Part shown: in pieces, positions 1,768 to 58,721 of the stretch | Position numbering within the stretch: the first letter of the stretch is position 1 | Layout: each line of letters begins with the position of its first letter | Assembly (NCBI RefSeq): GCF_011386835.1 | Contig: NC_088808.1 | Coordinates: forward strand, 22,568,001-22,632,000 | DNA length: 64,000 nucleotides | Direction: 5' to 3' | Origin: Chrysemys picta bellii | Taxonomy: Eukaryota | Made by a program: the position numbers and the translations under genes | The notes under the pieces: generated by a model | The model's database searches: none | What the model saw: only the letters and a program-made list of their open reading frames with translations | Told to the model about the DNA's origin: nothing

Positions 1768-1799
<32 letters not shown>

Positions 1800-4287: not shown

Positions 4288-4324
<37 letters not shown>

Positions 4325-18499: not shown

Positions 18500-21400
18500 A
18501 ATAAAGTGTGTGTGTGTGTGTGTGTGTAAAAATGGATCGAACACAATCAATTGGGCTAAAAAGATATATTTATAAAAAGATTGCATAACGAGCCCATTAC
18601 AAGTAAATTGTATCACCTATGTACGGTGGACACACCTTGACTATGGAGTTCTTATAATTTTAATATTTCTTGTATGTTTTTTCTTCATTTGTTTAAAAAG
18701 ATACCAGAATAACAATTGTCTTGATTAAGCAAGACAAGAAACCTCATTGAGCAAGTATTGAGCTAACTAACGTGGCACAACTGGGGTCTGAAAGGTTAAA
18801 ATACTCCCAGTATAGCTTTAGATTACACATAACAGATAAAATTCACTAAGAGATTTAAATCAAGTGTTCCTTGTGGGTATACTTTACTGACTACAGACAC
18901 CGTGTGCAGGGAGTCTACTCTAAAGCTGACATCACATAAGTTTGGCTTGTTTTAATATGCCAGTCAGTCAATCAGAAAAGGTCCTAATGCACTCTTTAGA
19001 ACCCTAAGGGTTCTACCCAAGTCTATCCTTAAAGTAGTGTATTAATAAATAGATACCTACCTACCTTCCTTTTTCCTACAAAAGGAAGATTGGATTGGAT
19101 TCTCTATGGTATTAATCAATGTCTATTTTTAATTGGCTAGAAGGGATCTTGGTGAATGGCATTAGATGCTCCCTGCTCAGGGAACATGGGCCTGGGATAT
19201 TAATCCTACTTTATTTCATGGCAATGGAAAGCCTGACTAGGCTACAAATGTTTTAAATCAACATTAATTTTGCAAAATAAGTTAAGACCTTTTGTTAAAG
19301 CATCACAGAACACTCAGAAATACAGGTGGTAATTAAATATAGTCACCTGTGGTGTTTCATGACCTTTTCTACTATAGTTCTGAATAAAGTCCACTAGCCC
19401 ATGTACCACAGTCTTCACCGCCACCATTGCATTTTCCAGCTGCTCCCATGTTGGAGAAGTTGCATCTACAATTGATAAATTTAAAGCACGTTTTAACAAT
19501 AATTCCAATATCATCGTCTTAAATGAGACAACTTTTATATTACACCAGAAACACCCAATACAAGGATTAAGAGGAAACAATCTTGAACAGCAGCTTAAAA
19601 ACATCAATTGATGGGAACGGTTTAGAGCAGAAACAGAATTTATTGCCAGTATAGTTATATTTTTCATAATAAGAAAATGGAAAAAGTTTTTTTTTACATT
19701 TATTAGCACCATTCACATACCTGGATTAGGATCTATGTTTGCCAGAAGCTCTAAATGAGGCCTAAGTCTGTTTAAGTTTGCTGGATCACCTGTACGTTGC
19801 AAGACAATTGTCAACTCCTGTACACTTTTTGCAAATGATTCTGGAGACTGGAGCTGAAAATAAAAGTGACATTAATGCTCTTCATTCTATAAACTGGACA
19901 TTTTAACAGAAAAAGTATTCTCATTTTCTTTCAAGAGAGATGGGCTCCAAAATGATATAGGTAGTGTCTTCAGCTTGCATATAGTAATTATCAGTGGTGA
20001 GAGATTACAATTCTCAGCTCAGAATCTGCCCTATGAAGCTTCATCATAAGACACAAAACTAGAATAAGTGATTTTTTTTTGCACTGCTTCTCTGTGACTT
20101 TTGTAAACACTAAACATTCTGAAAAGGGCTTTGTACATAAAGATTACGTATGAAAAAACAGCTATCCTAGTTTCTAGTCATGTTAAAACTTAGTTAAAAT
20201 TAGAGGTTATAGTTTAAAAACTGCTTCAGCATTATACCCTTTAACTGTTAAATCTACCAAGAAAAGGACACTAAATCTATCCCATTGACGAACCTTGTCA
20301 ATAATGGATTGCATGTGTGACTTATGTGCCAGGTCACCATAAAGGAGGGAAGACCATTGTTCTGGTGATATTCGAAGTCCTGCTTCCATGGCAATGTGGA
20401 CAATTTGGGCATCATGTTCCCTCCGCAAAGCCTCATAACTCCGAAATTCCTCTTTAAGCTGCATCAGAGAAGAATCTTCATCCCTTTTGGTGACCTAAAA
20501 ACAAGAATTCAACAATGCTTAGAAACTTCATATTTCTTTAATTACAGCAGAGTCGATCAGAGTCCAGCTGATGTATAAACAAGTGTGCTGTGGTTTATAG
20601 CACTGGGTCTCAACCAGGGGTCCAGGGCCCCCTAGGGGGCCGCGAGCAGTTTCAGGAGGTCCTCCAAGCACGGTCAGTATTAGACTCACTGTGGCCCAGG
20701 GCAGAAATCCGAAGCCCCACCGCAGTTATTGTGGCACAGGTGGGCCATGGAGATTTTATAGCATGTTGGGGGGGCCTCAGAGAGAAAAAGGTTGAGAACC
20801 CTTTGTATAGAGAATCAACATTTAGTTCTTTCAACTATTCATCCCCCTGCAGGGTACTAGCATTACTGCGGGCTAGCCAGATAATCCAGTGTTGTATAGA
20901 TAGTCATTATGAGGACATGACATCGAGTCCAATCACTTCAACTAAGGCAGAAATTGGATTTGCTTAAGTCTTTGAAGATATGATGTGGTTTGCAGGATAT
21001 ACAGCTATAGGATTAGACCTTCAGTTCCACTATCATTTCGATATATCCAATGTTAAAAGACAATTCAAAGAGAGACAGGCAAAATTCAGAATTTAATTGG
21101 TAAATATGGGGCGGGAGGGGAGGGTGAAAGATGATCAAAAAGTTGCAGTGCACTCTATAATTTAGAGTATACCTTACAGAAAGACAATTAGTATCAGTAC
21201 AGTATTAAAAATACCTGGCTCTTACATACACCTTTCATCTGAGGATCACACTTCACTTTATATACATATTAAACCTCACAAATATTGGCATAGTCAGTAT
21301 TATCCCATTTTATTGATAGATAAACTGAGACACAGTAAAGCAAAATATCTTGGTTCAAGGTCACTAATTGCATCAGTGACACAGGCAAGAATAGAACCCA

Positions 21401-24400
21401 CAAGTTCTGGCTCCTAGTCCTTTAACTCATGTGCAACACTGCATCTTTATAAAAAGAAAAGTAAAGTAAAGATGTGATACACATTTTATTATGATTATCC
21501 AGAAAAACATCCAACAAATCTTATTTGGGGGGAAAAGGTGTTATTGCTAATGGGTCACAAATCAAATTACTGCTTACATTATGTGTATATCAAGTATGAT
21601 TTCTGATAGAAGGCCTAGCGTATATGCTGAAATAAAAATTTAACCATCTTCCCATGTCATCGAACATAAGAGCTTTTGTATCAAATATTGATATTCTATC
21701 AAAGATGTCCAGAACAAACTACTGTCTTTGTCAGCTGATATTATTTTATTGCCTTTCTGGGCCAAGTAATTTCTTAATGATCGTGCTCTACATTACCATA
21801 CAGGAAGGCAGAGTTCACTTCCTACTCCTGATCTCTTATTCTTCAGAGACGAAGAGTTGGGAGCATTCAGTGGAAAAAGAGGCATGGTATAATAATTGAG
21901 AGGTTTAAACATTTCATGTCCATTTTATAATGGATGCATCGGTACTGAATGCATTAAGATTCACTCTCCATATATTTCAATCCCACCATCTCTGTGTATG
22001 CAGAGACTATAGTTAGTGGGATTAGATGGGGTCGGCAACCTTTCAGAAGTGGGGTGCCGAGTCTTCATTTATTCACTCTAATTTAAGGTTTCGCATGCCA
22101 GTCATACATTTTAACATTTTTAGAAGGTCTCTTTCTATAAGTCTACATTATATAACTAAATTATTGTATGTAAACAAGGTTTTCAAAATGTTTAAGAAGC
22201 GTCATTTACAATTAAATTAAAATGCTGATCTTATGCCACCAGCCTGCTCAGCTTGCTGCCAGCCTGGGGTTCTGTTCACCTAGGCCAGCAGCGGGCTGAG
22301 CAGGGCCTATGGCCGGGACCCCAAACCTGGGGGGGGAGGGGGAGGGAGGGGGAAGAGGGTGTTTCAGGAGTCAGGGCAGAGGGCTGGGGTGTATGGGGGT
22401 GCAGGACAGAAGGCTGGGTGTGTGGGGGGTTCAAGGGTCAGGGCAGAGGGCTGGGGGGGTGCAGGACAGAAGGCTGGGTGTGTGGGGGGTTCAAGGGTCA
22501 GGGCAGAGGGCTGGGGGGGTGCAGGGCAGAAGGCCAGGTGTGTGTTGGGGTGTGGGGGGGTTCAGGGCAGAGGGCTGGGGGTGCAGGGCAGAAGGCTGGG
22601 GGTGTGTTGGTGTGAGGGTGCAGGGCAGAGGGCTGGGGGTGTGTTGGTGTGAGGGTGCAGGGCAGAGGGCTGGGGGTGTGTTGGTGTGAGGGTGCAGGGC
22701 AGAGGGCTGGGAGTATGGGGGTGCAGGGCAGAGGGCTGGGTGTGTGTTGGGGTGGGGGGTTCAGGGCAGAGGGCTGGGGGGGTGCAAGGCAGAAGGCTGG
22801 GTGTGTGGGGGGGGGTTCAGGGCAGAGGGCTGTGAGTGTGGGGGTGCAGGGCAGAAGGCTGGGGTGCTCGGCTCATGGGAGTGCTCCCAGCCCCCTGCCC
22901 TGAGCGGCTCAAGGCACGGGGCTGGAAGGGATATGCCCTGTTCCACCCCCTTCCCCCAGGCTCCGTCCCTACCTCTCTCTGCCTGCTCTACGGAGCTGTG
23001 TGCACGCTGCCGCTCGCTAGGGCCATCAGCTGATTGGTGCAGGGACGGAGAGGAGGAGGGGCAGGAAAGCACCGCTGGGGGAAGAAGAGGGGGATAGGGG
23101 AAGCTTGGCTGCTGCAGAACCAAGCTTCTGCCTCCTGCCCCCGCAGGGGAGAGCGGTGGGCGGGGAGGCTGAGTGGGGCTGGGGGCCGGGACTACGTCAG
23201 GGAACTGCGTGCCACTCAAAAATCGGCTTACGTGCCGTAGGTTGCCGACCCCTGGATTAGATGATTAATTGCTTTTAGATCACTTCTTGATGCTTCATTG
23301 TATCTTTAGATTGGGTAAAATCTGAATTTGAGTAGCATGTTGCAGGTGAAATATATTCATGCCATATTGTTCCTCAGAACTATATGCTAAACATTGCTAA
23401 TGTATCAAAAAGTTTTTAAAAAATAAAACTGGTATTAAGTTGCAAAAAATAAAAAGCAAGTTTTCATTTTAAATTATCCAATCTTTTACCTTAAAGCATG
23501 ATGCTCGATACAGTAGTTGCACAACATGACCAATGCTTGTTTTTGATGCCTGAGGAAATCTTGGTTCTAGTCTTTGCACAACAAAAAGTACCAAAACTTT
23601 TCTTGAGAGCGCAGAGCCATCTTCAAGTGCCAGTAACACAAGTTTCAAAGCCTCTTCTTGCATAGCTTTAAACAGATGTAAAAAAAAAATAGTCATAAGA
23701 AAAGTAAGACTACCACATATTAACAGTATACACAGGAACATTTGGTTTGAGAGTTCTTGTCCACAATATATCTTAACTATTTTTAGTCCAACAAAACAAC
23801 CACAGCAAAACACAGTCAGTGAAAACTTGCCCCATTTTAAGAAATCTGCTAGTCCAGATATGAAGCAGTACGCAGAAATGCTTGAAATGCAGTAAGTGGT
23901 TCCAGTTAAAAGAAGACAGAATGATTCAGGGCTCCCTGTTTTCAATAATATTGGCGCTTTTTAACTTTTGGTTTTACATTGCAGTCTCAACATTCAGCCT
24001 TTGTCATTTCATATAGCTTGCCAATTTTATACTAGGAAGCTGCATGAAATCTAGCGGTAGGAATGGCACAGGAATATTAGAACTACCCATCAGAATTACA
24101 AGTTCGTGGCATTGCCAACTTAAACAGAATCTTCTGATGAACCCTGCACTCAATTTGGCATCAATTTACTGATAACAGCTGGTTTATATCAAAGAGTCCA
24201 AAGCCATAAATTATAACTTAACTGCTTGTAGCACAGTATTACCATGCAACCTGGGCTGGTGGTTTTGGACTCTATGACTTAAGATATAGGCGCAAACATA
24301 ACTGAATGAGAAACCTTGTGCCTATGCACTAATCATAGTGCTCAGTACTATCTGCATGTTACATAACAGTACTGGGCTACAGACAATAAGGAAAATACAT

Positions 24401-27400: not shown

Positions 27401-28081
27401 TTTGACTCAACTAGTTCCCAATGCGAAGGATGAATGAGTGTAATCTGCAAATTAATTTTTCTAATGACACTTCTGATTGTCCTCTAGGTCCAGGAGGCAT
27501 TTATCTACAAGCTCACACAGCTATACACCCAACCATATTGGAAGACGCTCTTAAAAAATCATTTTACAGACATATTCTGTCCAGAACTGTGGCACATTAC
27601 AGAATCACTCTTATAATAGAGTCCTGTCTACACAAGACGACGAAATATTGTTTTAGTGGTGACAAGGGACAGCTGTCTGGTAACCTGGTCCCTTGTTGTG
27701 ATTGTCTTTGTAGGGTACACAGGCCTTCAGATGCTATAAAGGTCAGACCTTTTCTTTTCCTTGATTGGAACAGTGAGGATGTATTCCTGCTGCAAGGGTA
27801 AAATGTAAATGGTAATGTTGGAAAAAAGTAAATAGCTCCTTAAGCCATACCTGGGCTCCAACTAACTGGAGAAGTGCAAAGTTTACTGGAAGCACATCGA
27901 TGTCTGTGTTGATGGCAGTCTGGTCGAAAGGACATGCTTTGCGATGAAGCTTGTTCAGGCAGGTCTTACAGACAGTGTGTGAGCAACCTAAGCTGATGGG
28001 CTTGTGCACATTCTCATCAAACTCATTGTAGCAGATTGGACAGGACAGAAACTCCGTCCACTGAGCTGCCTGCACAGGCAT
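288..28081 (-). CDS. RC3H2: RC3H2 / Roquin-2 (RING, ROQ, CCCH zinc finger, Pro-rich region), spliced CDS, 3'-partial: join of 27851-28081, 26004-26121, 24641-24874, 23490-23665, 20294-20494, 19721-19853, 19347-19465, 12142-12254, 11230-11538, 9864-10078, 7713-8140, 6008-6178, 4971-5126, 3204-3417, 2974-3058, 1041-1122, 288-422
   Basis: Exon translations give [21 protein letters not shown] (RING), the ROQ domain, [20 protein letters not shown] (CCCH) and the Pro-rich region as recognised for Roquin-2. All introns are GT-AG and the exons sum to 3120 nt in one open frame. Confidence 0.97.
669..847. mobile_element. Tc1/mariner (Tigger-like) MITE
   Basis: TIRs CAGACGCTCCCC / GGGGAGCTTCTG flanked by TA at 667-668 and 848-849; no ORF. 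Confidence 0.8.
1041..1122 (-). CDS. RC3H2: RC3H2 exon 17 ([27 protein letters not shown])
   Basis: ttaaag|G acceptor, CAA|gtaaga donor, 82 nt. Confidence 0.95.
1262..2750 (+). repeat. MIR/CORE-type SINE split by a hAT insertion (halves ~1262-1346 and ~2640-2750)
   Basis: Removing 1347-2639 restores attttacatacagggaaac|tgaggcagagaagtgaagtgacttgc, the MIR core motif. Confidence 0.75.
1347..2631 (+). mobile_element. Internally deleted hAT DNA transposon with transposase C-terminal remnant
   Basis: TIR CAGGGTGGAT / ATCCACCCTG; perfect 8-bp TSD AGGGAAAC (1339-1346, 2632-2639); 1851-1988 translates [37 protein letters not shown], resembling the hAT dimerisation motif. Confidence 0.9.
2974..3058 (-). 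CDS. RC3H2: RC3H2 exon 16 ([15 protein letters not shown]...YIER)
   Basis: ttctag|AT acceptor, CG|gtatga donor, 85 nt. Confidence 0.95.
3204..3417 (-). CDS. RC3H2: RC3H2 exon 15 ([15 protein letters not shown]...PISVS)
   Basis: gtatag|GAT acceptor, TCAG|gtacag donor, 214 nt. Confidence 0.96.
3827..4079. mobile_element. PIF/Harbinger-like palindromic MITE
   Basis: Ends ggcctgggtccacact / agtatagacctaccc; internal inverted repeats (acttcagctac..gtagctgaagt); CpG-rich, so relatively young; TSD unclear. Confidence 0.65.
4291..4340. repeat. T27 + (AC)n simple repeat
   Basis: Read directly. Confidence 0.95.
4971..5126 (-). CDS. RC3H2: RC3H2 exon 14 ([17 protein letters not shown]...NAVLM)
   Basis: caatag|TTC acceptor, ATG|gtatgg donor, 156 nt. 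Confidence 0.93.
6008..6178 (-). CDS. RC3H2: RC3H2 exon 13 ([10 protein letters not shown]...VDFSTE)
   Basis: ctctag|GAG acceptor, GAG|gtgaga donor, 171 nt. Confidence 0.95.
7417..7652. mobile_element. pogo/Tc2-like MITE
   Basis: Perfect 23-bp TIR CCCTGTTTCCCCGAAAATAAGAC / GTCTTATTTTCGGGGAAACAGGG, TA at both sides, internal repeats of (g)ccttattatcgg. Confidence 0.88.
7713..8140 (-). CDS. RC3H2: RC3H2 exon 12 (Pro-rich; [11 protein letters not shown]...VPLPR)
   Basis: ttcaag|GA acceptor, AGG|gtaagt donor, 428 nt. Confidence 0.96.
8480..8560. repeat. Compound (TG)/(TA) microsatellite
   Basis: Read directly; boundaries approximate. Confidence 0.8.
9604..9810 (+). mobile_element. tRNA-derived SINE with CR1-like 3' tail (tortoise Pol III SINE type)
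   Basis: A box TAGCTCAGTGG (9620-9630), B box GTTCAATCC (9665-9673), CR1-type tail gatgacctttcaaggtcccttccagttcta, short tandem tail. Confidence 0.85.
9864..10078 (-). CDS. RC3H2: RC3H2 exon 11 ([11 protein letters not shown]...PQYPQT)
   Basis: tttcag|T acceptor, ACAG|gtgagt donor, 215 nt. Confidence 0.95.
11230..11538 (-). CDS. RC3H2: RC3H2 exon 10 ([16 protein letters not shown]...ESLSE)
   Basis: atatag|G acceptor, AA|gtatgt donor, 309 nt. Confidence 0.95.
12142..12254 (-). CDS. RC3H2: RC3H2 exon 9 (CCCH zinc finger)
   Basis: [37 protein letters not shown]; tttaag|CCG acceptor, AA|gtaagt donor, 113 nt. Confidence 0.97.
12682..12849. mobile_element. Decayed hAT-Charlie-like MITE
   Basis: Ends CAGCGGTTCTTAAACT / AGTTTGGGAACTCCTG; no clear TSD. 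Confidence 0.6.
13950..14330 (-). mobile_element. Probable DIRS-like (tyrosine-recombinase retrotransposon) ORF1 relic
   Basis: Frameshifted translation [16 protein letters not shown] / [40 protein letters not shown] resembles the DIRS ORF1 C-terminal region as recalled; not searched. Confidence 0.45.
14507..16675 (-). mobile_element. CR1 LINE, 5'-truncated and internally deleted
   Basis: 3' tail taagaacataagaac on +; RT remnants [19 protein letters not shown] and FADDTKL; endonuclease start [15 protein letters not shown] at ~16320-16470; frameshifted. Confidence 0.95.
18440..18527. repeat. Compound (TG)n(TA)n(CA)n-AATAAAG-(TG)n microsatellite
   Basis: Read directly. Confidence 0.95.
19347..19465 (-). 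CDS. RC3H2: RC3H2 exon 8 ([13 protein letters not shown]...GHETPQ)
   Basis: ttgtag|AT acceptor, CAG|gtgact donor, 119 nt. Confidence 0.96.
19721..19853 (-). CDS. RC3H2: RC3H2 exon 7 ([14 protein letters not shown]...IDPNP)
   Basis: tttcag|CTC acceptor, CCAG|gtatgt donor, 133 nt. Confidence 0.96.
19964..20054 (-). ncRNA. SNORD90: Box C/D snoRNA, SNORD90 orthologue
   Basis: Sense to host: terminal stem GTGTCT/AGACAC, box C ATGATGA (20047-20041), D' CTGA after GCTTCATAGGGCAGATT, degenerate C' CTGATAA, box D CTGA (19973-19970); ~110 nt upstream of the exon 7 acceptor; SNORD90 is known to be hosted by RC3H2. Confidence 0.92.
20294..20494 (-). CDS. RC3H2: RC3H2 exon 6 ([17 protein letters not shown]...SIIDK)
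   Basis: ttttag|GTC acceptor, AAG|gttcgt donor, 201 nt. Confidence 0.96.
20601..20805. mobile_element. hAT-Charlie-like MITE
   Basis: Ends CACTGGGTCTCAACC / GGTTGAGAACCCTTTG; TSD not clean. Confidence 0.7.
21225..21422 (+). repeat. MIR/CORE-type SINE relic
   Basis: tattatcccattttattgatagataaactgagacacag..aaggtcac..agaatagaacccac resembles the MIR core. Confidence 0.65.
22028..23254 (+). mobile_element. Non-autonomous hAT element with expanded internal G-rich minisatellite
   Basis: TIR (CA)GGGGTCGGCAACCT / AGGTTGCCGACCCCTG; TSD GATTAGAT (22020-22027, 23255-23262); arms match the copy at 25510-25821. Confidence 0.9.
22330..22870 (+). repeat. G-rich minisatellite (core gggtgcagggcagagggctggg; ~37- and ~60-bp higher-order units)
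   Basis: Read directly; 60-bp period visible at 22441/22501. Confidence 0.92.
23490..23665 (-). CDS. RC3H2: RC3H2 exon 5 ([11 protein letters not shown]...RASCFK)
   Basis: ttaaag|CT acceptor, AAG|gtaaaa donor, 176 nt. Confidence 0.96.
24641..24874 (-). CDS. RC3H2: RC3H2 exon 4 ([12 protein letters not shown]...CQFLGP)
   Basis: ttaaag|GA acceptor, CCAG|gtagga donor, 234 nt. Confidence 0.96.
25510..25821 (+). mobile_element. hAT-Charlie-like MITE (short sibling of 22028-23254)
   Basis: TIR CAGGGGTCGGCAGCCT / AGGTTGCCTATCCCTG; TSD TGCTAGAC / TACTAGAC. Confidence 0.9.
26004..26121 (-). CDS. RC3H2: RC3H2 exon 3 ([19 protein letters not shown]...SGGK)
   Basis: ttgtag|GTA acceptor, AAGG|gtaagt donor, 118 nt. 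Confidence 0.96.
26370..26890 (-). mobile_element. Old L2-like LINE 3' fragment
   Basis: Purine-rich + strand; minus translation ..[15 protein letters not shown].. resembles the L2 ORF2 C-terminus; boundaries approximate. Confidence 0.5.
27851..28081 (-). CDS. RC3H2: RC3H2 exon 2 coding part (RING finger); exon spans 27851-28147
   Basis: [41 protein letters not shown]; CAG|gtatgg donor; acceptor tttacag|CTG at 28147. Confidence 0.97.
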
Positions 28082-30946: not shown

Positions 30947-31510
30947 AAGAGTCATTTTCCTGATCTGTGCTGGAACGTAATGTAAACAAAACATTAATTC
31001 CTCAAAGAGTATACCAGCAGCTTTTAAGACCTTATTTTGAATATTTAATCATCATAAATGAGGATCCTATTGAGCATGTGTTGACCTTCAGATTTCTTGT
31101 CAGGGAGGAATCTAATTAAATCAGCAAGAGCTGGGGAAAGTTCTCAACTCCTAAAACTTCAAGCAGCCATATTCAGAGGAGGCCTTCAGTACCGTTTCAC
31201 GCATGCCAACTATTCTGATATTTTTGCTCTCCAGTATCTTCAAAAAGGATTCTAACTAAAGTCTACTAATTATCAAGTCAGTTTCTTAAAAAAATATAAA
31301 GAAATGGTTGTACAGACCCGATTTTTCTGACAAGGAACACATTTAGGGATGTTCTGTTGAAAAACAAATTGCTCTAATAATCTAAAAATTGAACAAAATT
31401 AAAAAAAAGTGCCCTACCAAAAATCATTCCGACAAGAACTGTCAACTTAAAAATCTAGTCTCTTTTAAGAGACGAACTGAAAGTATTTTCAGATGCTACC
31501 ATTACCCTGG

Positions 31511-31602
31511 TCTTGCGTCTGATGAAGTGGGCATTCACCCACGAAAGCTTATGCTGCAATACTTCTGTTAGTCTTAAAGGTGCCACAGGACCCTTTGTTG
31601 CT
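31511..31602 (+). mobile_element. Penelope-like-element-derived 92-bp insertion with minimal hammerhead motif
   Basis: 11-bp direct repeat CATTACCCTGG both sides; GCGT-CTGATGA-A-GTGGG(cattca)CCCAC-GAAA-GCTT-ATGC. Confidence 0.85.
31515..31554 (+). ncRNA. Minimal type I hammerhead ribozyme motif
   Basis: Core CUGAUGA and GAAA, 5-bp stem II, palindromic AGCU stem III, stem I GCGU/AUGC. Confidence 0.75.
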
Positions 31603-32133
31603 CATTACCCTGGAGTTGTCCTGATCTTTCTGTGTGAAAAACCCACAAACATGATATAGAAAATGACTAAGCACAAAGTGCTGTCAAATACAGAAAGTAA
31701 ACAAACGAGTACTTTTTTTTATTGTTAACAATAGTAGGTAAAAATATTCAGAAAAATGTGATTTTTCAGCTGTTATCTTATTAAGAGCAGCATCTTAGAT
31801 TACTAAACCTGAAGATTTTAGAAGTCTAAATATACTGTTTGCTATTTATTATGTAACTATTGCATTTAGGACAGACTAGTTCAGATAAATCCAGTTTCAC
31901 TTTCTGCTTCTGCTGCAGGAGCAAAATGCTGTTGAGTTTGAGTTCACAACCCTGCAAGGGAATGTTTAAATTTTCCTATCAGCCACAATTAGTAAACTCG
32001 ACTTTCCTTCAAACATTAGTTTTTTTAAAACTTTATAATTTGTGAAGCGGATTCACAATGGAATGATATGGTATATGGGGCTCATATTTTAAACCAATTC
32101 AGGTATGCTTACTGGATCCTGTAACCTTCCTTA

Positions 32134-35199: not shown

Positions 35200-36130
35200 C
35201 AGACGAGAATGCTAGTTGAGACACGGCCTCAGGTGGGAGCGTAGCCCCGTCCATGTCCCCCCGGAATCCGTGGCCTCTGCGTGCAGCCCAGTCGTGGCGA
35301 TGGCTTTGCAATGCAGACACCCGGCCCTCAGGAACGGTCCCCAAGCTCACCGCACAGGAGCCACCCAATGGCAGCTGGGATTCTCCAGCAGCCTGGCCAG
35401 GAGCGGAGCCGGAGCCAGAGCCAGAGCGAGGCAGGTGAAAGCCCCCCGGCCGCCAGCCGCACCACACAGAGATCAACCACCACCCGGCAACGGGGCTGCC
35501 GAGCGCACCCGCCGCTGGGCCCGGGGGGGGGGGGGGGGTGTGTCTGAGCGCGCCCCTGACAGCGAGGGGGCGGGGAAGGAGCTGACGGGCCCACTCCTCC
35601 GAGCAGGCAGCCCCACCCCGAGCGAGGGGCCCGGCCTAGGAGACCCTCCGCCGCGGCGCTGCCGCAGGGCACCCGGGGGAAGGGAGAGGGGGCTGCTGCA
35701 GAAGCGCCCTGGCTCTCTCCCCCCAGGGAGCTACTCCCCCGGGCCCCCCGCCGAGAGCCGGGCCCCCTCCCTCCGAGCGAGGCCCGGCCCCCGGCTCTCC
35801 CTGGCCAGGCGCCGCCCGCCGAGCGGCCCTACCTGCGAGGCGCGGCCGGGCCGGGAGCAGGAGGCGGCACCGGCCTCTCACACTCCATGGGGCGGGCAGC
35901 CCGGAGCGGCCCGGCGGTGGCAGCAGCGGGGGCCTCGGCGGCGCCTCCTCATCGCGGTGACAGACGGGAGCCCAACCCCTCCGCCCCGCTACTATCGCGA
36001 GAGCTGCCAGGATCACGTGAGAGGGGAGCCCAGGCTGGCACCGCCCCCCTCACGCGCATCACGTGACAGCGAGTCCCACTCCGGTTGGGTGAGCCGCAGC
36101 CCTAGTGCCTCGTGGGAGGCGATCTGGAGG
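35200..36130 (-). promoter_or_regulatory. RC3H2: CpG island / RC3H2 promoter with two TCACGTGA E-boxes (36013-36020, 36059-36066)
   Basis: Very high GC and CpG density 5' of RC3H2 exon 2. Confidence 0.9.
35833..36000 (-). other. RC3H2: RC3H2 non-coding exon 1 (5' end approximate)
   Basis: Donor CGCAG|gtaggg at 35833/35832 inside the CpG island. Confidence 0.65.
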
Positions 36131-38104
36131 GGAGGGACTGGGGAACCATAGACATGACTGATGGAACAGACAAGCCCCAGCTCTCCCCTTCAGGATGGAG
36201 GCATGGAGTACCATGGAGAGGCTAAATGGGAAAGGTAGCCTTTCCCCCGCCCCTAGGAGAGCATCACAGCCTAGATGTAGCAGCCAGGCCCACTACTGCA
36301 GCAGGCTAGTGCGATGAGTTCTCTCCCTTAGCACTTATAGCCCTAGACTCCACTGGCAGGGAACAAGAATCTAGTTTATCCCGCAGGCTGTAGCCCTGCT
36401 TCTGCTTAAAGCTTTTCTTGTATTAATACAGCTCAGGAGCAGAACCGAAGGCTGCAGCTAGAGGCATCATGAAGACTTTTGGTACTGATGCTGCAAGTTG
36501 GCCATGTTTGTTTACTGGGCTAGGGCCTTCTTTTCCTCCTCAGTAATAACCTGGTACAGAAACCAAAAGCAAAAGCGGTGTTACTGGAAATAAAGAAGCC
36601 ATGCCTGCTTTCTCTCCCCCCACAGAAAGAGAAGGCAGGCCCTTTGCACTGTATAACAATGAAGAGCTCTACAGGGCAGTTACTCTGTAAGTTGAAACTT
36701 CAATCAGGAACATCTCAGAAAAGGTCTGCAACAACCTCAGTTTTTTGCTACATTCTTGCATCTATGCTTCTGGAGGCCCGTGATAATTAAGTAGGCCATT
36801 TCCAGCTTTAAAGAGCTATAATAAAGGTTGACGCAGTATAAATTCTGCATCCTTTGATCAGATAAATCATTTTATCTTATAGACTACCACAAAAGGTGAT
36901 TATATATGTATGTAACAAAGACTGTGGTTCCCAACATGATTAGCAATTGAGAATGTGCTTAGAATATGGAGTCAGAAATAATTTCTGAAATAAATGGAGA
37001 GTTTCTTAACATAATATTCAATACTTTAAGGCAGTTTCAGACTCAATGACTTTCCTCAATGTTGTGTGTGTATATATACAAACAATGCCTCTTATTTCCA
37101 TTCCATTTTATTTATGTTATAAATAGAGCAAATGGTTACATTTAAAAAAATGGTACAAGGGGAGTTGTATGCATACATATGCCTGAGTCCAATTCTCTTT
37201 AACAAAATTCATCAAGTAAGAAATTCTAGCCACTGAAGAGGTACACACAGCTTCCTCTCAGATGTACATGCACTACAACAGCTGAACAAAAGTTACCAAT
37301 CCTCACACAGAAGGTGCATATCAAGATCATAACCTCTATTTCCCCTTTATCAGTTAGGGAAACAACATGAGTAACACACACCTAGATCAGGCAATGATTG
37401 TTTGAATTCATATTGCTGAGACTCATGCACTTGCCAGAAAGGCATTTTAGTTGAACAAACCCAAAGACAGCCAAACCAAGGCTCTATCTGCCCCACAACA
37501 GCACAATACATTTAACTTCTATACTACAATATTATAAAGGGTCCAATTTAAAAGGAGCATCAAGTTTTCCTTAATTTGTTAGTTTAATACAGTTCTCCAA
37601 TGTTTTCTGACATCTCCTAACATGTAAGGAACTGATTTTTAAAAAAAGTGTGCAAATCTGCAGGCACAAATGAACAGTTAGATATAAACCTGTACATACA
37701 CCCACGTTAATATTTGTTAATACAGTAACCAAGAATACCGAGTAAGTATGTTTTTGGAAGTCAGGTGAACCGTTAATGTTACCATTAACAAAATAAAACA
37801 TTTACAAAACCAAAAATGAATCCTTTGCATTTGTTACTATGTGAGGGACCCTCACACCCACCACTAAATGCAAGGTCAACAAGACTGCAAACACAGATTA
37901 GTCAAAGAATACAAACCAAAACTAACAAAATGCCATAAAAAGCAATTAATCACAATTGTAAAACAGCCATGTTTCAAACTTAAAACTTGCAAAATTCATT
38001 ATGCATCAGTGTCCAGCAAATAAGGAAAACCCAAACCCTTAGTTTGGCAAGTATAATTGTTATAGTTAAGAATGCCAGAACAATGTTGTCCAAATTATGT
38101 ATAT

Positions 38105-40126: not shown

Positions 40127-41410
40127 CTAATCATAGTCTATTTTGATTTGTGTAATTGTGTCAAGGTTTGGTTTGTCACCACCATTCCTTCCGTGAACTG
40201 AAGTCAAGTGCTTTTTTAGGGCAGATTTGTGTTTAAAGTCCATGTCACAACAATGGCATTTGTAAGGTCTGTCCCCACTGTGAATATTCAAGTGGTCCTG
40301 AAGCGTGCTTTTAGCAGTAAATGTCTTCAGACAAACCATGCATTGGAATGGGCGGATGCCCATGTGCCCTCGGATATGCCTATTGAGATTCTTCTTTTGT
40401 GTAAATGTTTTCCCACACTGTAAGCATAAGAAAAGTTTGTGCATTTTTAGGTGTCTCAGATAGTTTTCAAGGTGGACAAATCCTCGGGGACATTTAGGAC
40501 ACTGGTGCCGCCATGAATAACCAGAATCCTCCAGACTCTGAAACCCACTCACTACACTCGAGGTTCCTTCTGTATTGTCACTGACAAAGCCCTGAAAATG
40601 ATTCCCAGGCACTTCTGTAATTCTACTCTCAACAGTAGAATTTATCAGTGAATGTTGTGTTTCTGGAAAATATAAACTTGTTTTAGAGGAAGTGCAAGGC
40701 TGTGGAAAATGATCATTTTCCACATTGGCTGTGCTCATGGAATCCATTCTGAAGATACAAATTTCATCATCTTTATATCCTATTTCAACTGTGGAAATCT
40801 CTGGAGTTTTCATGTCCTTTCTTTCCGATATTAAACTTTGCATTGCAGGTTGTAAGGCATCCCCTTGCTCCCGTTTTACATTATATTCTATATTAACAGG
40901 GCTATCTTCAGAAATTTCAATTATTTCACAGTCTTTATCCAAATTGTCATCTTTATTTCTCAGCTCAGTGTCTGAGGAATGACATTTCTCTGTGTTCTGA
41001 TTACTGTTCTCCATAGAAGCATCAATTTCCAGATATTTAGACAATGCTTCGGTACATTTCTCTACAATGTGGACCATCTGAAGGTAACTTGCAGCAATGA
41101 GATATTTCAAAAGCTCCTTCTTTTTAACTTCGAGAGCACCAGTATAACAAGACAATAGTAACTTTCTGCCAACCTCAGCACTCTGCAATATGGTGATTCG
41201 CATCTGTTTCGACTGACTGAGCAAAAACTGATCCCTCATAAATGTGGAGCAGGCAGCAAAAATCACTTTGTGTCCATGAAACTCAGTGTCATTGATATAT
41301 ATTGATACATCACAAAATAAATTCTGCTGTCTCAAGAGGTTCATCTTTTGCAACACAGCATCCCCTTGCTGTTCAAACTGGAAATGCAGCACATCTGAGT
41401 CCGTAGCCAT
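40127..41410 (-). CDS. ZBTB6: Zinc finger and BTB domain-containing protein 6 (427 aa; BTB + 4 C2H2)
   Basis: MATDSDVLHFQFEQQGDAVLQKMNLLRQQNLFCDV BTB domain and four C2H2 fingers; acceptor ccatag|GTTGTCAACATG at 41419; synteny with RC3H2. Confidence 0.97.
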   Translation of the reverse strand: MATDSDVLHFQFEQQGDAVLQKMNLLRQQNLFCDVSIYINDTEFHGHKVIFAACSTFMRDQFLLSQSKQMRITILQSAEVGRKLLLSCYTGALEVKKKELLKYLIAASYLQMVHIVEKCTEALSKYLEIDASMENSNQNTEKCHSSDTELRNKDDNLDKDCEIIEISEDSPVNIEYNVKREQGDALQPAMQSLISERKDMKTPEISTVEIGYKDDEICIFRMDSMSTANVENDHFPQPCTSSKTSLYFPETQHSLINSTVESRITEVPGNHFQGFVSDNTEGTSSVVSGFQSLEDSGYSWRHQCPKCPRGFVHLENYLRHLKMHKLFLCLQCGKTFTQKKNLNRHIRGHMGIRPFQCMVCLKTFTAKSTLQDHLNIHSGDRPYKCHCCDMDFKHKSALKKHLTSVHGRNGGDKPNLDTITQIKIDYD

Positions 41411-41759
41411 GTTGACAACCTATGGAAAACGCACAACAGAAACGTTACAATTCAAGTATATCATTCTGGATGCAGCTTTCACTGTCTCAAACTTCCAATC
41501 TGATATTTACTGAATACGATTTCATCAGCAGTTTAAAGCCACTGCATATACCGGTGCTGAATAGTGTTTATGCAGAGTAAGGCTCAAAAGCTTACTTAGG
41601 GGCTTGCAACTGGCCTGGTTCTGTATTCCAGTCTAGACAGGGCTCCCCCATAAAACACTCATATCTAACCCTTACTCTCAGCACGGTGCCTACAAGAGCC
41701 CGTGGACACAAGTAGGAGTAGCCAGGCTTAGCCACAGCTGGGTCTGAAAACTATTTAAA

Positions 41760-42460
41760 ACGGTTACGAGCCCTACGTCGCAGTGCCACCCTCGCAGCTG
41801 CACGACGCCCCCCATCCAGCCCAGCCCAGCCCAGCCGCCAGACCTTGCTGCGCTTCCTCTCTGCCCAAACCCGCAGGAGCCCCCGCCCTCCCGAGCTGCT
41901 CCGGCTCTAGGCCCAAGTGAAGGCGGCTGGAGACGCCGGAGCCGGAACCTCCCCCTTCCGGGATTACCACCTTCTCCTTCCACGTTCCTCAGCCCCGAAC
42001 CGGCTGCGGCAGCCCTGAGAGCAAGCGCTACCCACCGCAACCGATGAACCGGAAGCACATTCCCAAGTCCCGCCCCCTCCACCGGAAGAGATCTTTGTGG
42101 AGCGCTCTATCAGTCCCCTGACCCCAGCTACCGGCCTCCCCTGCCCAATAGGACGAGGCAGCGGCAGGGCTGCGGCTTCCGGGAGCCCGGAAGTGGTTCG
42201 GGCTGGAGGCGGATGTGTTTCCGTTCGGACTCCGCCGTGCCTGTCCCCTTCATGGACGCACAGACTGGTGGGGCAACACGAGCCTCCGGGCGGAGTCATT
42301 GGGCCCCATCATCCCCCACGACGGGGACGGGGACGGGGACGGGGACACCGGGGGACGAGCCCCCCTCCCCCCAGCGGGAGACGTGTGTGTAACGGGAGGG
42401 GGTGAGTCCCGCTCCCTTGCCAGGGGCTACCGTAGCTGGAGGGTTTACGAACCCGGCAGG
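41760..42460 (-). promoter_or_regulatory. ZBTB6: CpG island / ZBTB6 promoter and non-coding first exon
   Basis: CpG-rich; ETS-type CCGGAAG at 42049, 42082, 42187 and reverse at ~42176; GC box; exon 1 donor not resolved. Confidence 0.85.
42320..42346 (+). repeat. (GGGGAC)4 tandem repeat
   Basis: Read directly. Confidence 0.95.
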
Positions 42461-45205
42461 GATCCTCCCCCATACCACAGCCCCCTCACTTGCCCACTCA
42501 GGTGCGGTGGCTCCACCAGGCAAAAGCCAAGCGTCACAGCTGGTCATGAAATCATCGGTGGGCACCTACAACTGGAGGGTGACGGCTGCCTCTCCAGCCT
42601 GGCAGCCCTGCTCCCGGTGGGCCTGCGGGCTATGGTGGTCTACTACATTCCTGCAGCCAGCCGAGTCTTAGGCCCATTCAAATGAAATTTGTGTAGAAAT
42701 GGGCCATTTTGCTTATGTCTGAAAAACACATACAGGCAAGGGGCTTAGGGGGAAGTTTAGAATAAGCATTGGCATCGTTACAATGCTTCCCAGCTAAGGC
42801 TCTCACCGCATTGTACTAACAACAGATTTAGCTACAGGGAGCAAAGCAACAGGTGAAAATGAAGCAGAAAGACGATCAATGAATTAGCCAAAGCCACAGA
42901 GCATACCAGAACCAGAAGATAAGCTCAAGAAAGTCAATGCCTTCTGTCCTTTAACCACAAAACTAGCCCTTAGAGTCCTTTAGGACAGAGTAGTGGAGTC
43001 AGTTGTAGTAATAAAGAGTAACTCATAATGGATATGGCACGCTCTTAGTGACATTTATTTAAGTCCCTCTGGGATATTTTCCAAGGTTGTCCATCAGTAA
43101 GGAATTCCAGATTTAGAAACAATTAAGGGTCTGCTCATAATTCAGGCATTTTAGTAGAAGGCAGAATTAGGCTCAGTAGTTGTAGGGGGAAAAATAGTTA
43201 CTTCTCATCACCCCTACTACCACTCACAGAATTATTGCTGTTTGGGGCAAAAAATTCAGAAACCCTACACCCTAAATGGGATATTTTAGATTACTTTGGT
43301 TTTCCTTTTAGATCACACAGTGAGTAATAGGCATTAGAAATCCTTGTGATCTGTACAGAACATACCATAAAAAAAAGCTAGTAGTGATACAAAAGTTGGC
43401 TCATCCCTTAAACAGTACTCAAAGAAAGAGTAGGCAGAAAGGTGCCTAAAAAGAGTTTAAAAAGCCATTGATGCACCAGCTTTGGTAATAAAAATGTGTA
43501 TTCAACTTCCTCCTAATCATTGAAGAGGTACTTAATTATTCTGTGGAGCATAAACTAGGATAAAGGAAATAGATGTTCAGTATATCCCTTCTCCATGGAG
43601 AATTTGACTGTCTCTATATCAGGTCAGTATAGTGAACTACAGTTCTGTACATTTGCTCATTTCATCTGCACCATTGTTTTTATTATTAAAAAAAAAAAGG
43701 AAAGAAAGACAACACAGAACTGCAGGATACCAGTAATATTTTTAATACAGTTTTGCTTTTTGTCACATTTTTAATTAAACTCTCTCTCCCTACTCTCCAT
43801 CCCTTCTCAAAATGACTCCAGTATTCACCACCAGTCCTCTCATGTTCTGTACTTTCGCATTCAATGTGCTCTATGTTCAAGTCAAATAAGACTACTGGTG
43901 TGACAAATTGTATAGGTTTATAAGTTTTGCCACAGAGGAGGAGGGGGAAAACCCACAAAAAACCTGATACTTCAGGTATGTCAGAGTCACTAACTTGTAA
44001 AATTCTTCTATAAAAAGGTAAGACAAACCTACAGTAGTTCTCTTACCCATATGTTCATCAAGTAAATAGGTTCTAAAAGCAAAAATAATCCTTACAAATG
44101 TGGCCAAAGTGTCTTTCAAATATTTTAGTAATGGTAGACTTTTCCCCTAATTATTTTTAGGATAGGCAGGAACTTGTACATTACACTCAGTTGTGAGATT
44201 ACCCATGTATCAGTAAATGGTGTTTGACACATTAACATACAGATTATGACAATTGCCAGAGAATTTATCTGACTAAGCAACAGCACTATCAACTTCAAGT
44301 GGATCTAGGCCAGTTAGAACTTTGCAATAAAAAGTGATTTAGAAGAAAGTTATACATACATGATTGGCTACATATTAAGTTCATTTTATTCTATAACAAA
44401 GCTGCCTTTGGATAGTCTGTATAAATAGATTTTATAACAATAGTGCCAGGCTCCATTTTAATTCTTAATTCAGGGGGAAAAAAACATTGACAAGATTTTC
44501 TTTGTCTCTAGTCCACATTAGAGCTATGATAACCCATTTTCCATATAATGAATATTATAGTATCAAATGTTTGAACAATATGGAAGATTCTGCCTGAAAT
44601 CAGATCCACATGCAATATTTCAGACATAATAACCATGGGGTAACAGCTCAAGCTGATTCTGTATGCAGGTTTTTGATTTTTTTCTTTAAAAAATTTAATT
44701 TATTTTTCCATGCAAGCTGTCTCTGAACCAAGATTCTGAAATAAATAGTTTCCTAAAATAGTTACATTTCAGAACTAAATTAATCTGCTATGATATTTGT
44801 TTCCCCCTCTCCATTGCCCATTACTTATTCCAAAACTGTACACATAACAGGCAACTATAGCCGTTTAAAACTTTCTATCTGAAAAGGTGATTGTGTCCTT
44901 TCATAACATTTTGCAACATTAGCACTTCATTCACTGTAATGCTTGTTTTGGGAACTTCTGACTTTTGTATGCCCCTTTTCTCAAGACCCAAGCTGTCTTT
45001 TGATAATGAAATATACATTATTTTCTGCAATAAAATGCTTTGGTCATATTTTAGTTTAGCATTGTTACAGTTCTAGACTTAAACAGCTGCATTAGAAGTA
45101 ATACTTGATCCAAATGTGAAAAGCAGTTCTTTACCAAGGGTCAAGCAGTAGATTATTAGACCACACTGCATTTCAATTCAGTAAGAGTGCTACTCTTCTG
45201 TAAAT

Positions 45206-45259
45206 CTTCTCTTCTGACTTCTGTTAGTCTCAAAGGTGCCACAGGACCCTCTGTTGCTT
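45206..45259 (+). mobile_element. 5'-truncated copy of the Penelope-derived mini-element (no hammerhead)
   Basis: acttctgttagtctcaaaggtgccacaggaccctctgttgct; 12-bp flanking repeat TCTTCTGTAAAT (45194-45205, 45260-45271). Confidence 0.85.
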
Positions 45260-48544: not shown

Positions 48545-49864
48545 TTAATTAACACAGGTGCTATCACTCCTTAAATTGAGCACAGCCTGGGCCAATTTCC
48601 CTGCATCCAGTATCTGGCTTGCATCAGCTTGTTGACAGACCTTACTGTCTGTAGCAGTGCTACAGCTGAAAGAATCAAAGTCCACCGTTATATCTTGAAC
48701 ATTCCTTTCATTGGCATTGTCAAAACTATTTTTTCCATGTAACTGTTTAAGGTGTTTCCTCAGAACAGGTTTATGTGCAAAGACCATGTCACAATAGTTA
48801 CATTTATGAGGCTTGTCTCCACTGTGCAGATTGAGATGGTCCTGTAAAGAACATTTCTGAGAGAAGGTTTTCCCACAGATTTTACACTGAAAAGGTTTGA
48901 TCCCTGCATGCACTCTCATGTGTCGGTGGAGATTGCCTTTCTGAGTGAACGTCTTACCACACAGCAGACACATGAACAGTTTATGCATTTTTAAATGATT
49001 AGCATAGTTTTCCAGGTGCCGGAATACTCTGGTACACTTGGGACACTGGTGGTGCCATTGGAGACCCTTGTCTATACCTCTGTTGTTAGGACCAAACATG
49101 TCTTTAGAGGCCATGATGAAATTGTCACTGCCAGCATAAGAAAGGGCATAGTTGTGGAGATGATTTTGTTCTATTTCACTCGTTCTGTTTTCCACAGTGG
49201 AATTGATTAAAAAGTGCTGAGGCTCTGATGAATGTAAAGCAGTTTGTTCAGAAGAAATAAACTGGGTTTGATCTTTTTTATTTCTAACCTCAGACACCTC
49301 CCCAATAGACTCCACCTTGACAATCTGAATGTCACTATCTTCCATGTCCATACTGTCTTCTGAGGTTTGAATACATAGTGAATCCTGTTGCAGAGAGTCC
49401 TCATCTCCTTGGTGTTCTTTCAACTCGGAAGAATCGCTTTGCTGTTCACAATCCTCCTTGCTCTCCAATGGCTTCTTAGGTTTTATAAACTTCCAGAGAG
49501 CCTGTGTACATCGTTCCACAATGTGGCTCATCTGAAGAAAGCTTGCAGCAGTCAAGTAATTTACCAGCTCCATCTCAGGAAACTCCAGAATACCACTGTA
49601 GCAGGACAAAAGCAACTGTCTCCCCACTTCTGAACTCTGCAGAATGGAGATTTTAACCTCTCTGGAGTCATTCAACAAAAACTGATCTCTTAAAAAGGGG
49701 GAGCCTGCAGCAAACACAATTTTATGCCCATGAACCTCAACATTATCTATGTGAACTACGACATCACAAAACTTATTTTCTTCCCTCAGTTTGTTCATTT
49801 TTTGTAACATTGAATCTCCATAATTGTCAAACTTGAAGTGAAGGATATCTGATCTTTCGGACAT
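48545..49864 (-). CDS. ZBTB26: Zinc finger and BTB domain-containing protein 26 (439 aa; BTB + 4 C2H2)
   Basis: True start MSERSDILHFKFDNYGDSMLQKMNKL at 49864, after acceptor ctttag|ATCTGCCAAAATG (49874); four C2H2 fingers. Confidence 0.97.
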   Translation of the reverse strand: MSERSDILHFKFDNYGDSMLQKMNKLREENKFCDVVVHIDNVEVHGHKIVFAAGSPFLRDQFLLNDSREVKISILQSSEVGRQLLLSCYSGILEFPEMELVNYLTAASFLQMSHIVERCTQALWKFIKPKKPLESKEDCEQQSDSSELKEHQGDEDSLQQDSLCIQTSEDSMDMEDSDIQIVKVESIGEVSEVRNKKDQTQFISSEQTALHSSEPQHFLINSTVENRTSEIEQNHLHNYALSYAGSDNFIMASKDMFGPNNRGIDKGLQWHHQCPKCTRVFRHLENYANHLKMHKLFMCLLCGKTFTQKGNLHRHMRVHAGIKPFQCKICGKTFSQKCSLQDHLNLHSGDKPHKCNYCDMVFAHKPVLRKHLKQLHGKNSFDNANERNVQDITVDFDSFSCSTATDSKVCQQADASQILDAGKLAQAVLNLRSDSTCVN

Positions 49865-51345: not shown

Positions 51346-51439
51346 GGCAACAGAGGGTCCTGTGGCACCTTTGAGACTAACAGAAGTACTGGGAGCATAA
51401 GCTTTCGTGGGTCAGAACCTCACTTCTTCAGATGCAAGA
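51346..51439 (-). mobile_element. Penelope-like-element-derived 94-bp insertion with minimal hammerhead motif
   Basis: 11-bp direct repeat TACCAGTTTAA (51335-51345, 51440-51450); same family as 31511-31602. Confidence 0.87.
51395..51435 (-). ncRNA. Minimal type I hammerhead ribozyme motif, sense to ZBTB26 pre-mRNA
   Basis: GCAU-CUGAAGA-A-GUG(A)GGU(ucug)ACCCAC-GAAA-GCUU-AUGC. Confidence 0.75.
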
Positions 51440-52161
51440 TACCAGTTTAAAGGATTCTGGATGAATTACCTAAGGAAAGAGAAGAAAAGCCACGGTTAGC
51501 CAAAGGCTTATTTGCCTTACAACTTTAAAATGTCTTTAAAGAAAGAAGAATGATTTGAAAGTAATTAACTGTTTACATGTCCACACTACTATACGTGTGT
51601 TTTGAAAAACATTTTTCCAATACTGAAGAAGAACAGTATTGGAAAACTACTGGGGGTTAGTCAGAATTCCTCTCCAATTTATAAAATACTAGGCCTGCAA
51701 AGGGCCAAAAGCACCTGCCTACCTGCATTTGGCTCCATCTTTCTTTGTGGCTTTGCAACCAATAACAAGGGTAACATCCTTTTATTCCCCTTCTCATCCT
51801 CTCTTGGGTGGCTGCACCTTGTTCTTACAAGGAATTTCAGCTAATGAGCTATTAGAGCTTTCCTAGTTTTTACTTTATGTAATTCCACAATATAAAAGGA
51901 AGAAACCTGAGCAGCCCAGAGGCCATCTAGACCAGTGTCCTGGGTCTGGCACTCACACTATCAGCTGCTAGAGGGGAAAGCGAAAAGCCCCATAGGGGAC
52001 AGTTATGGGATTATTCGCCCACAGAGAAAGTCACTTCCTCGCCCTCCTTGGCTTAGTGGTTGGTTCATGACCCTGAGGAAAAACGGTCTAAAAATCCACC
52101 CTTAACAAGTGGGGCTGAGTGCTACACCGCCCAGGCTCCCCCCCTTCCCCACTCCACTCAC

Positions 52162-58654: not shown

Positions 58655-58721
58655 ACAGGTTTCAGAGTAGCAGCCGTGTTAGTCTGTATCCGCAAAAAAT
58701 GCCACAAGTACTCCTGTTCTT
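58655..58721. mobile_element. Penelope-like terminal fragment with internal inversion
   Basis: gtttcagagtagcagccgtgttagtctgtatccgcaaaaaa + tgccacaagtactcctgttctt; 12-bp flanking repeat TTCTCATACTTG (58643-58654, 58722-58733). Confidence 0.8.

What the first reader, a model, noticed from the sequence alone, without database searches (positions are those of the whole stretch)
31511..31602. 92-bp mobile unit carrying a complete minimal hammerhead ribozyme
Seen: stem I GCGU/AUGC, core CUGAUGA, an extra A, stem II GUGGG/CCCAC, GAAA, palindromic AGCU stem III, predicted cleavage after 31550 (CUU); 11-bp TSD CATTACCCTGG. Established: Penelope-like elements carry such minimal type I hammerheads, which tend to work as dimers, and an extra A after A9 is tolerated in a viroid hammerhead. 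Inference: this copy and the one at 51346 start at the same base (TCTTGC) and end at TGTTGC, suggesting a discrete non-autonomous ribozyme-SINE mobilised in trans. This copy is antisense to RC3H2.
Basis: partly seen in the sequence, partly recalled or inferred. Interest (0 to 1): 0.75.

Follow-up and report, generated by a model that had tools for sequence, protein, structure and literature searches.

The report
Short Penelope retroelement fragment with hammerhead
This is a 92-base dead copy of the tail end of a very abundant Penelope-like jumping gene, carrying that family's already described minimal hammerhead ribozyme motif; it is an ordinary repeat fragment, not a new kind of mobile ribozyme.

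Summary
A 92-bp insertion (31511-31602, + strand) sits between perfect 11-bp target-site duplications. It carries a complete minimal type I hammerhead motif at 31515-54, with the predicted cut after 31550. A structural descriptor finds this one locus in the window and none in 300 random sequences.

Rfam's hammerhead models do not recognise it, even at E<=10.

It is the 3' end of a Penelope-like element (PLE). All of the motif's odd features were described for PLE hammerheads in 2014, with turtles mentioned: an extra base after A9, a G10.1-C11.1 pair, and a palindromic AGCU in place of helix III.

Contigs of four related organisms hold about 900 to 10,000 look-alike pieces each. Some copies run on past both ends of the unit: a weakly shared upstream sequence, and a downstream "tail" starting TTTTACAGAT.

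The 3' end, 52 nt after the cut site, matches the proximal internal reverse-transcription start site reported for the Anolis PLE. A third copy in the window shares only the 3' end.

So this is not a self-propagating ribozyme-SINE. It is a dead-on-arrival short PLE retrocopy, lying antisense in RC3H2 intron 1.

One point stays open: 5' ends seem to recur at the hammerhead's 5' edge.

This scan had already reached the same reading for the sister copy at 51346 (s1-318413).

The parts
31500..31510 (.). Left target-site duplication CATTACCCTGG
   Evidence: the repeat finder; sequence
31511..31602 (+). 92-bp PLE-derived insertion (copy 1)
   Evidence: Bounded by the TSDs. 87% identical to copy 2. 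Thousands of look-alike contig pieces in four runs, while the flanks are single-copy.
31515..31554 (+). Minimal type I hammerhead motif: helix I 31515-18/31551-54, core 31519-25, extra A 31526, helix II 31527-31/31538-42, GAAA 31543-46, AGCT palindrome 31546-49, predicted cut after 31550
   Evidence: Direct reading. Descriptor scan: 1 hit against 0 in 300 random sequences. The monomer MFE fold shows helices I and II. No Rfam match.
31555..31602 (+). 3' terminal segment, ending 52 nt after the cut site at the presumed proximal RT start site (tail-less end)
   Evidence: All three window copies end at ..TGTTGC plus 1-2 nt. The main right-hand break in contigs is at 31602, followed in part of the copies by TTTTACAGAT. 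PMC11167929.
31603..31613 (.). Right target-site duplication CATTACCCTGG
51346..51439 (-). Copy 2 (94 bp): same 5' start TCTTGC, core CTGAAGA, helix II with a bulged A; TSD TACCAGTTTAA at 51335-45 and 51440-50
45206..45259 (+). Copy 3, 5'-truncated. The PLE-derived part is 45217-45259 and has no hammerhead. It is preceded by an 11-nt filler that repeats the upstream flank. TSD TCTTCTGTAAAT at 45194-205 and 45260-71.

Best explanation
Copy 1 is a dead-on-arrival, very short retrocopy of the 3' end of a Penelope-like element (PLE). The PLE family is highly abundant in this genome, which an earlier scan note calls a turtle.

Inferred mechanism: the PLE endonuclease made staggered nicks 11 bp apart. 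The PLE reverse transcriptase then started internally on the element's RNA, at the proximal of its two start sites, about 52 nt downstream of the hammerhead cut site. It copied only about 92 nt, through the uncleaved hammerhead, before the cDNA ended 4 nt upstream of helix I.

The hammerhead motif is inherited cargo. It is of the minimal, helix-III-less PLE type, which needs a second copy (a dimer) and probably the PLE protein to cut. Here it is a lone copy, antisense in RC3H2 intron 1, and most likely inert.

Shown here: the motif, the TSD, the repeat family, its fixed 3' end and its abundance. Inferred by analogy with the Anolis Poseidon element: the RT start site, the inability to re-mobilise, and the lack of activity.
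For: Motif and TSD.

Three copies in the window share the 3' end; one is 5'-truncated.

Contigs: 10,066 / 7,113 / 7,207 / 886 pieces at least 80% alike lie on the unit in four runs, while the flanks are single-copy. The main right-hand break is at 31602, with the loose letters starting TTTTACAGAT in all four runs (the tail). The main left-hand break is at 31514, and the last ~14 loose letters (..AAATTTCCAYTACA) are shared by all four runs, so some copies are longer.

A mini-insert of a second PLE family at 58655-58721 carries such a tail, plus an inverted piece that starts at the tail-less site.

Literature:
- PMC11167929: two internal RT start sites 30-40 nt apart. They lie roughly 46-56 and 82-89 nt after the cut site, by my count from the ORF sequence in its supplement. 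RNA 3' of the start site is needed, and the hammerhead cuts only with protein.
- PMC8557442: high 5'-truncation, the tail, and hammerheads near the 3' ends.
Against: Two of the three window copies start at exactly the same base, which plain random 5' truncation would rarely give.

I could not obtain a full-length PLE of this family. Placing the unit at the 3' end of a coding element therefore rests on the contig loose ends and on unchecked scan notes.

The loose-letter consensus upstream of 31514 is weak (agreement 0.39-0.49). Many copies may therefore truly end there.

The RT start sites were measured in a lizard element of a different sequence, not in this family.
Confidence: 0.8

Rival explanations
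1. One reading: a discrete, non-autonomous 92-bp ribozyme-SINE with fixed ends, which multiplies as its own lineage using PLE proteins in trans.
For: Copies 1 and 2 share both ends to the base and have 11-bp TSDs. The left-hand break at 31514 is by far the best-supported 5' break in all four runs, and its upstream letters are largely heterogeneous. An unchecked scan note (s1-322506) reports three more insertions with the 5' end at the hammerhead edge. Non-autonomous PLE derivatives are known (PMC8557442; preprint 10.64898/2026.07.22.740005).
Against: There is no internal promoter or tRNA/7SL/5S head. The unit ends at the RT start site, so it lacks the downstream RNA that the Anolis PLE enzyme needs. 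Part of the copies extend past both ends. A truncated copy is present in the window. Any copy longer than this one would also break at 31514 on this reference, so that break does not by itself show an end.
Confidence: 0.12
2. A solo monomer of an animal non-LTR retrozyme, that is, a tandem-repeat hammerhead element that propagates through self-cleaved circular RNA.
For: Retrozymes carry type I hammerheads, are related to PLE terminal repeats, and leave dispersed monomers. Reptile consensus lengths average 176 bp and family lengths go down to 51 bp.
Against: There is no tandem arrangement here. The unit's ends are not at the cleavage site, as a self-cleaved monomer's would be. The 3' end is the PLE tail-less end.
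Confidence: 0.04
3. An exapted, active ribozyme that cuts an antisense transcript at the RC3H2 locus.
For: The core is intact in copy 1. The insertion is present at the same locus in all four organism labels.
Against: Single minimal PLE hammerheads show no cleavage in vitro. The nearest other copy is 20 kb away on the other strand. The sequence is about 99% like the family majority, so its intactness reflects youth and not selection. No RNA data were available, since all runs were kept as contigs.
Confidence: 0.02

Closest known systems
Minimal hammerheads (min-HHR) of Penelope-like elements (Cervera & de la Pena 2014, PMC4209133; Lunse et al. 2017, as cited in PMC6765202)
   Same: Type I topology, a 4-bp helix I, the core CUGANGA, an unpaired base between A9 and G10.1, a G10.1-C11.1 pair, GAAA, a palindrome in place of helix III, mostly dispersed single copies from truncated PLEs; reported in turtles.
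   Different: Nothing in kind. This is one particular family and copy. Cleavage by this sequence has not been tested.
Poseidon_Ac (PAc) of Anolis carolinensis (Frangieh et al. 2024, PMC11167929)
   Same: The hammerhead lies just upstream of the insertion's 3' end. There are two alternative 3' ends about 40 nt apart (tail-less and tailed). The tail-less end lies about 50 nt after the cut site. There is evidence of priming from both strands (fold-back mini-insert at 58655-58721).
   Different: The sequences are unrelated at the nucleotide level. In PAc the ORF start sits at A9/G10.1. Here that triplet is AAG, and no long ORF could be tied to the motif.
Schistosome Sm-alpha / Sj-alpha SINE-like elements with a hammerhead (cited in PMC6765202)
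   Same: Short dispersed retroposons that carry a type I hammerhead.
   Different: Those have an internal promoter ahead of the ribozyme and a canonical hammerhead. This unit has neither.
Animal non-LTR retrozymes (PMC7229834; preprint 10.64898/2026.07.22.740005)
   Same: PLE-related type I hammerhead repeats with dispersed monomers.
   Different: Retrozymes are tandem arrays processed at the cut site into circular RNA. This unit is single, TSD-flanked, and not bounded by the cut site.

Membership tests
PLE-type minimal hammerhead (min-HHR) | Conserved core C3-U4-G5-A6-N7-G8-A9 ... G12-A13-A14-A15.1 ... U16.1-H17 | tested here: met
   CTGATGA 31519-25, GAAA 31543-46, TT 31549-50; descriptor hit
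PLE-type minimal hammerhead (min-HHR) | Helix I (4-5 bp) and helix II closed by G10.1-C11.1, with one unpaired base between A9 and G10.1 | tested here: met
   GCGT/ATGC; GTGGG/CCCAC; extra A at 31526. Copy 2 keeps helix I through a one-sided change (G-U to A-U) and has a bulged A in helix II.
PLE-type minimal hammerhead (min-HHR) | No stable helix III; a palindrome at 15.x/16.x that allows a dimer | tested here: met
   AGCT at 31546-49. The dimer helix is too weak to appear in the cofold MFE.
PLE-type minimal hammerhead (min-HHR) | Self-cleavage (as a dimer, or with the PLE protein) | not testable with these tools
   All sequencing runs were kept as contigs, so no RNA ends could be seen.
Rfam hammerhead families (Hammerhead_1, _3, HH9, HH10, II) | Covariance-model score at or above the gathering threshold | tested here: not met
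   No hammerhead match at gathering score, nor at E<=10 on 301-nt stretches around copies 1 and 2.
Penelope-like element, 3'-terminal fragment | Fixed 3' end at an internal RT start site with an optional 30-40-bp tail, variable 5' truncation, and a TSD of variable length | tested here: met
   Three copies end at ..TGTTGC plus 1-2 nt. One is truncated. TSDs are 11, 11 and 12 bp. The tail start TTTTACAGAT follows 31602 in part of the genomic copies.
Penelope-like element, 3'-terminal fragment | Continuity with an RT + GIY-YIG coding element of the same family | tested here: inconclusive
   There is a shared upstream sequence in part of the copies, but no full-length element could be fetched. Only unchecked scan notes place such hammerheads right after GIY-YIG ORFs.
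SINE / discrete non-autonomous retroposon | Discrete 5' and 3' ends in most copies, and its own lineage of copies | tested here: inconclusive
   2 of 3 window copies share the 5' end. A strong left-hand break at 31514 is seen in contigs, but longer copies would break there too.
SINE / discrete non-autonomous retroposon | Internal promoter (tRNA, 7SL or 5S head), or another way to be transcribed and recognised again | tested here: not met
   No tRNA or other RNA family matches on the unit. The unit ends at the RT start site and lacks downstream recognition RNA, by analogy with PAc.
Non-LTR retrozyme | Tandem units, each with a hammerhead; unit bounded by cleavage sites | tested here: not met
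   Single copies, each with its own TSD.

The most novel reading that the evidence does not exclude
The recurrent 5' end, 4 nt upstream of helix I, is a real and discrete RNA 5' end (a transcription start or processing site) of this PLE family. On that reading the 92-bp (tail-less) and ~135-bp (tailed) units are 'short-circuit' products. They arise whenever the PLE reverse transcriptase starts at the start site nearest the 5' end of its own mRNA instead of the distal one. That would be a built-in source of solo pseudo-LTR-like mini-copies, and could explain much of the element's huge copy number.
Probability: 0.15. Interest if true: 0.5.

Novelty: already known. Interest (0 to 1): 0.2.

Why it matters
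It matters little as it stands. It is one more truncated copy of a repeat whose ribozyme motif was described in 2014, and it is probably inert where it lies.

Its modest value is as a natural read-out of PLE mechanics. The fixed tail-less 3' end, the tailed relatives and the fold-back mini-insert in the same window match the two internal RT start sites and the two-strand priming found in vitro for a lizard PLE.

If a genome-wide census confirmed a sharp 5' end at the hammerhead edge, it would point to the 5' end of the PLE template RNA. It would also show that uncleaved hammerhead RNA is the usual template.

Tried and rejected
1. Rfam hammerhead models gave no match. These models require helix III, so this does not argue against a minimal hammerhead.

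2. I first took the ATG inside CTGATGA (31522-24) for the PLE start codon, because the cut lies 26 nt after it, as reported for PAc. I rejected this for four reasons.
- The PAc ORF sequence shows that its ATG is A9-N-G10.1, which is a different position.
- The 27-codon open frame here is not significant.
- The frame is broken in copy 2.
- An exhaustive search with the 30-aa translation found no PLE protein. It found only a Hox gene model that reads into another copy, plus two unrelated repeat proteins.

3. Pattern scans to collect more copies failed. Metagenome contigs gave 6 chance matches with no PLE context. Bacterial/archaeal genomes and viral contigs gave none.

5. No raw RNA reads were on offer, since all 24 runs are kept as contigs. 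Cleavage or transcription in vivo could therefore not be examined.

6. The dimer cofold does not recover the 4-bp intermolecular helix III as the MFE. This is uninformative.

7. Similarities between the flanks of copies 1 and 2 and the upstream loose-letter consensus (CCATTAC; CTGG) were considered as a target preference or a longer element. I left them unexplained.

Full report
**What is there.** The stretch 31511-31602 (+ strand) is a 92-bp insertion flanked by a perfect 11-bp direct repeat, CATTACCCTGG, at 31500-10 and 31603-13. Its first 44 bases hold every element of a minimal type I hammerhead:
- helix I, GCGT 31515-18 with ATGC 31551-54;
- core CTGATGA, 31519-25;
- one extra A, 31526;
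- helix II, GTGGG with CCCAC and a 6-nt loop;
- GAAA, 31543-46;
- the palindrome AGCT, 31546-49, in place of helix III;

A descriptor written to these rules finds this one locus on both strands of the window and none in 300 random sequences of the same composition. The looser pattern CTGANGA..CGAAAGCTT finds two loci against none expected. That is expected for a motif without helix III.

**Copies in the window.** Similarity search finds three copies.
- Copy 2 (51346-51439, minus strand, 87% identical) has the TSD TACCAGTTTAA. It starts with the same TCTTGC and ends ..CTGTTGCC. Its core is CTGAAGA and its helix II carries a bulged A.
- Copy 3 (45206-45259) shares only the last 43 bases, has no hammerhead, and has a 12-bp TSD. 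Its 5' junction holds an 11-nt filler that repeats the upstream flank.

So the 3' end is fixed to within 1-2 bases in all three, while the 5' end is shared by two of the three.

**Genome-wide view.** All sequencing runs on offer were kept as contigs, so they give positions only. I laid four runs from four coded organisms on 31361-31760. This put 10,066, 7,113, 7,207 and 886 contig pieces at least 80% alike on the unit, while the flanks are single-copy.
- The best-supported right-hand break is at 31602 (143/148/147/37 contigs). In all four runs the letters that follow begin TTTTACAGAT before fading into noise.
- The best-supported left-hand break is at 31514 (168/126/137/27 contigs). The letters before it agree poorly overall (0.39-0.49), but the last ~14 (..AAATTTCCAYTACA) are the same in all four runs.

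Hence part of the family's copies run on past both ends of the 92-bp unit with shared sequence.

Junction-spanning contigs show this very insertion in organisms A, B and C (left junction, no mismatch) and in D (right junction). Copy 1 differs from the family majority at essentially one base (31556), so its intact core reflects youth and not selection.

**What it is.** The features match the minimal hammerheads of Penelope-like elements described by Cervera and de la Pena (PMC4209133):
- a short helix I;
- a G10.1-C11.1 pair;
- palindromic 15.2-16.2 positions;
- occurrence mostly as single motifs from truncated PLEs;
- presence in "turtle and snakes";
- no detectable cleavage by a single motif, and only weak cleavage by dimers.

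PLE insertions are known for heavy 5' truncation, hammerheads near the 3' end and an optional 30-40-bp tail (PMC8557442). Frangieh et al. (PMC11167929) showed several things for the Anolis element:
- reverse transcription starts internally at two sites about 30-40 nt apart, which define the tail;
- RNA downstream of the start site is required;
- both DNA strands are nicked and extended;
- the hammerhead cuts only in the presence of the protein and is not needed for insertion.

From the ORF sequence in their supplement I count those sites at roughly 46-56 and 82-89 nt after the cut. Here the unit ends 52 nt after the cut, and the tailed relatives go on for some 40 nt more. A mini-insert of a second PLE family at 58655-58721 (minus strand) shows the same logic: a tailed arm joined to a 21-nt inverted arm that starts at the tail-less site.

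**How it most likely arose.** The endonuclease made nicks staggered by 11 bp. Reverse transcription was target-primed and began at the proximal internal site. The cDNA ended after about 92 nt, 4 nt beyond helix I, and was then joined to the target. The template was uncleaved at the hammerhead. Because the copy ends at the start site, it lacks the downstream RNA needed for a new round, so it is dead on arrival (inference from the Anolis element).

**Genomic context.** The unit sits on the + strand between the RING-coding first coding exon of RC3H2 (27743-28081, minus strand) and a CpG island at 35.2-36.2 kb. It therefore lies antisense in what should be intron 1 (SNORD90 on the minus strand). 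With no second hammerhead nearby it is most likely inert.

The shared 5' start of copies 1 and 2 is real and unlikely under uniform truncation. The left-hand break at 31514 is strong, and an unchecked scan note reports the same architecture elsewhere. But every copy longer than this one would also break at 31514 on this reference. Part of the copies do continue upstream, a truncated copy lies in the same window, and the unit has no promoter or recognition RNA of its own. I therefore rate a self-propagating ribozyme-SINE at about 0.12. [quoted passage not shown]

One contig in organism A joins a unit end, ten T's and a second unit that begins exactly at the predicted cut site (table 5c). This echoes other scan notes, but it is a single observation.

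**What failed.**
- I withdrew my own first idea that the ATG in the core is the PLE start codon.
- Scans of metagenome, prokaryote-genome and viral contigs gave only chance hits or nothing.

Noticed in passing
window 58655-58721 (minus strand), TSD TTCTCATACTTG at 58643-54 and 58722-33: A 67-bp mini-insert of a second PLE family. A 46-nt tailed 3' end (..CAGACTAACACGGCT..) is joined to a 21-nt inverted arm that starts at the tail-less site. It looks like the product of priming from both DNA strands at the two RT start sites.
   Followed up: partly
window 45206-45216: The 5' junction of truncated copy 3 holds an 11-nt filler, CTTCTCTTCTG, that repeats the upstream flank CTACTCTTCTG (10 of 11). 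It looks like a template switch onto target DNA.
   Followed up: partly
table 5c, run X1 (joint 31602 to 31557): One contig of organism A has a unit end, then ten T's, then a second unit that begins ATGCTCC, exactly at the predicted hammerhead cut site. This would fit a cleaved RNA used as template. It is a single contig.
   Followed up: no
window 19954-20069 (minus strand): SNORD90 box C/D snoRNA (57.4 bits, E 1.8e-07) in an RC3H2 intron.
   Followed up: no
window 27743-28081, 23469-23945, 40127-41410, 48545-50098 (all minus strand); CpG islands 35201-36200 and 41601-42600: The gene order RC3H2 (RING and ROQ exons), then a 427-aa and a 517-aa BTB plus C2H2 zinc-finger ORF (ZBTB6-like and ZBTB26-like), all on the minus strand. 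Promoter-type CpG islands lie upstream of RC3H2 and of the first ZBTB gene.
   Followed up: partly
protein P0001, from another genome: A 141-aa gene model of a Hox homeodomain exon reads straight into a tailed copy of this PLE unit. This is an annotation artefact in a public protein set.
   Followed up: no
window 31493-31510 and 51440-51455, compared with the loose-letter consensus: The flanks just upstream of copies 1 and 2 contain CCATTAC and CTGG, which also occur in the weak upstream consensus of other copies. The cause could be chance, a target preference or insertion into older PLE debris; this was not resolved.
   Followed up: no
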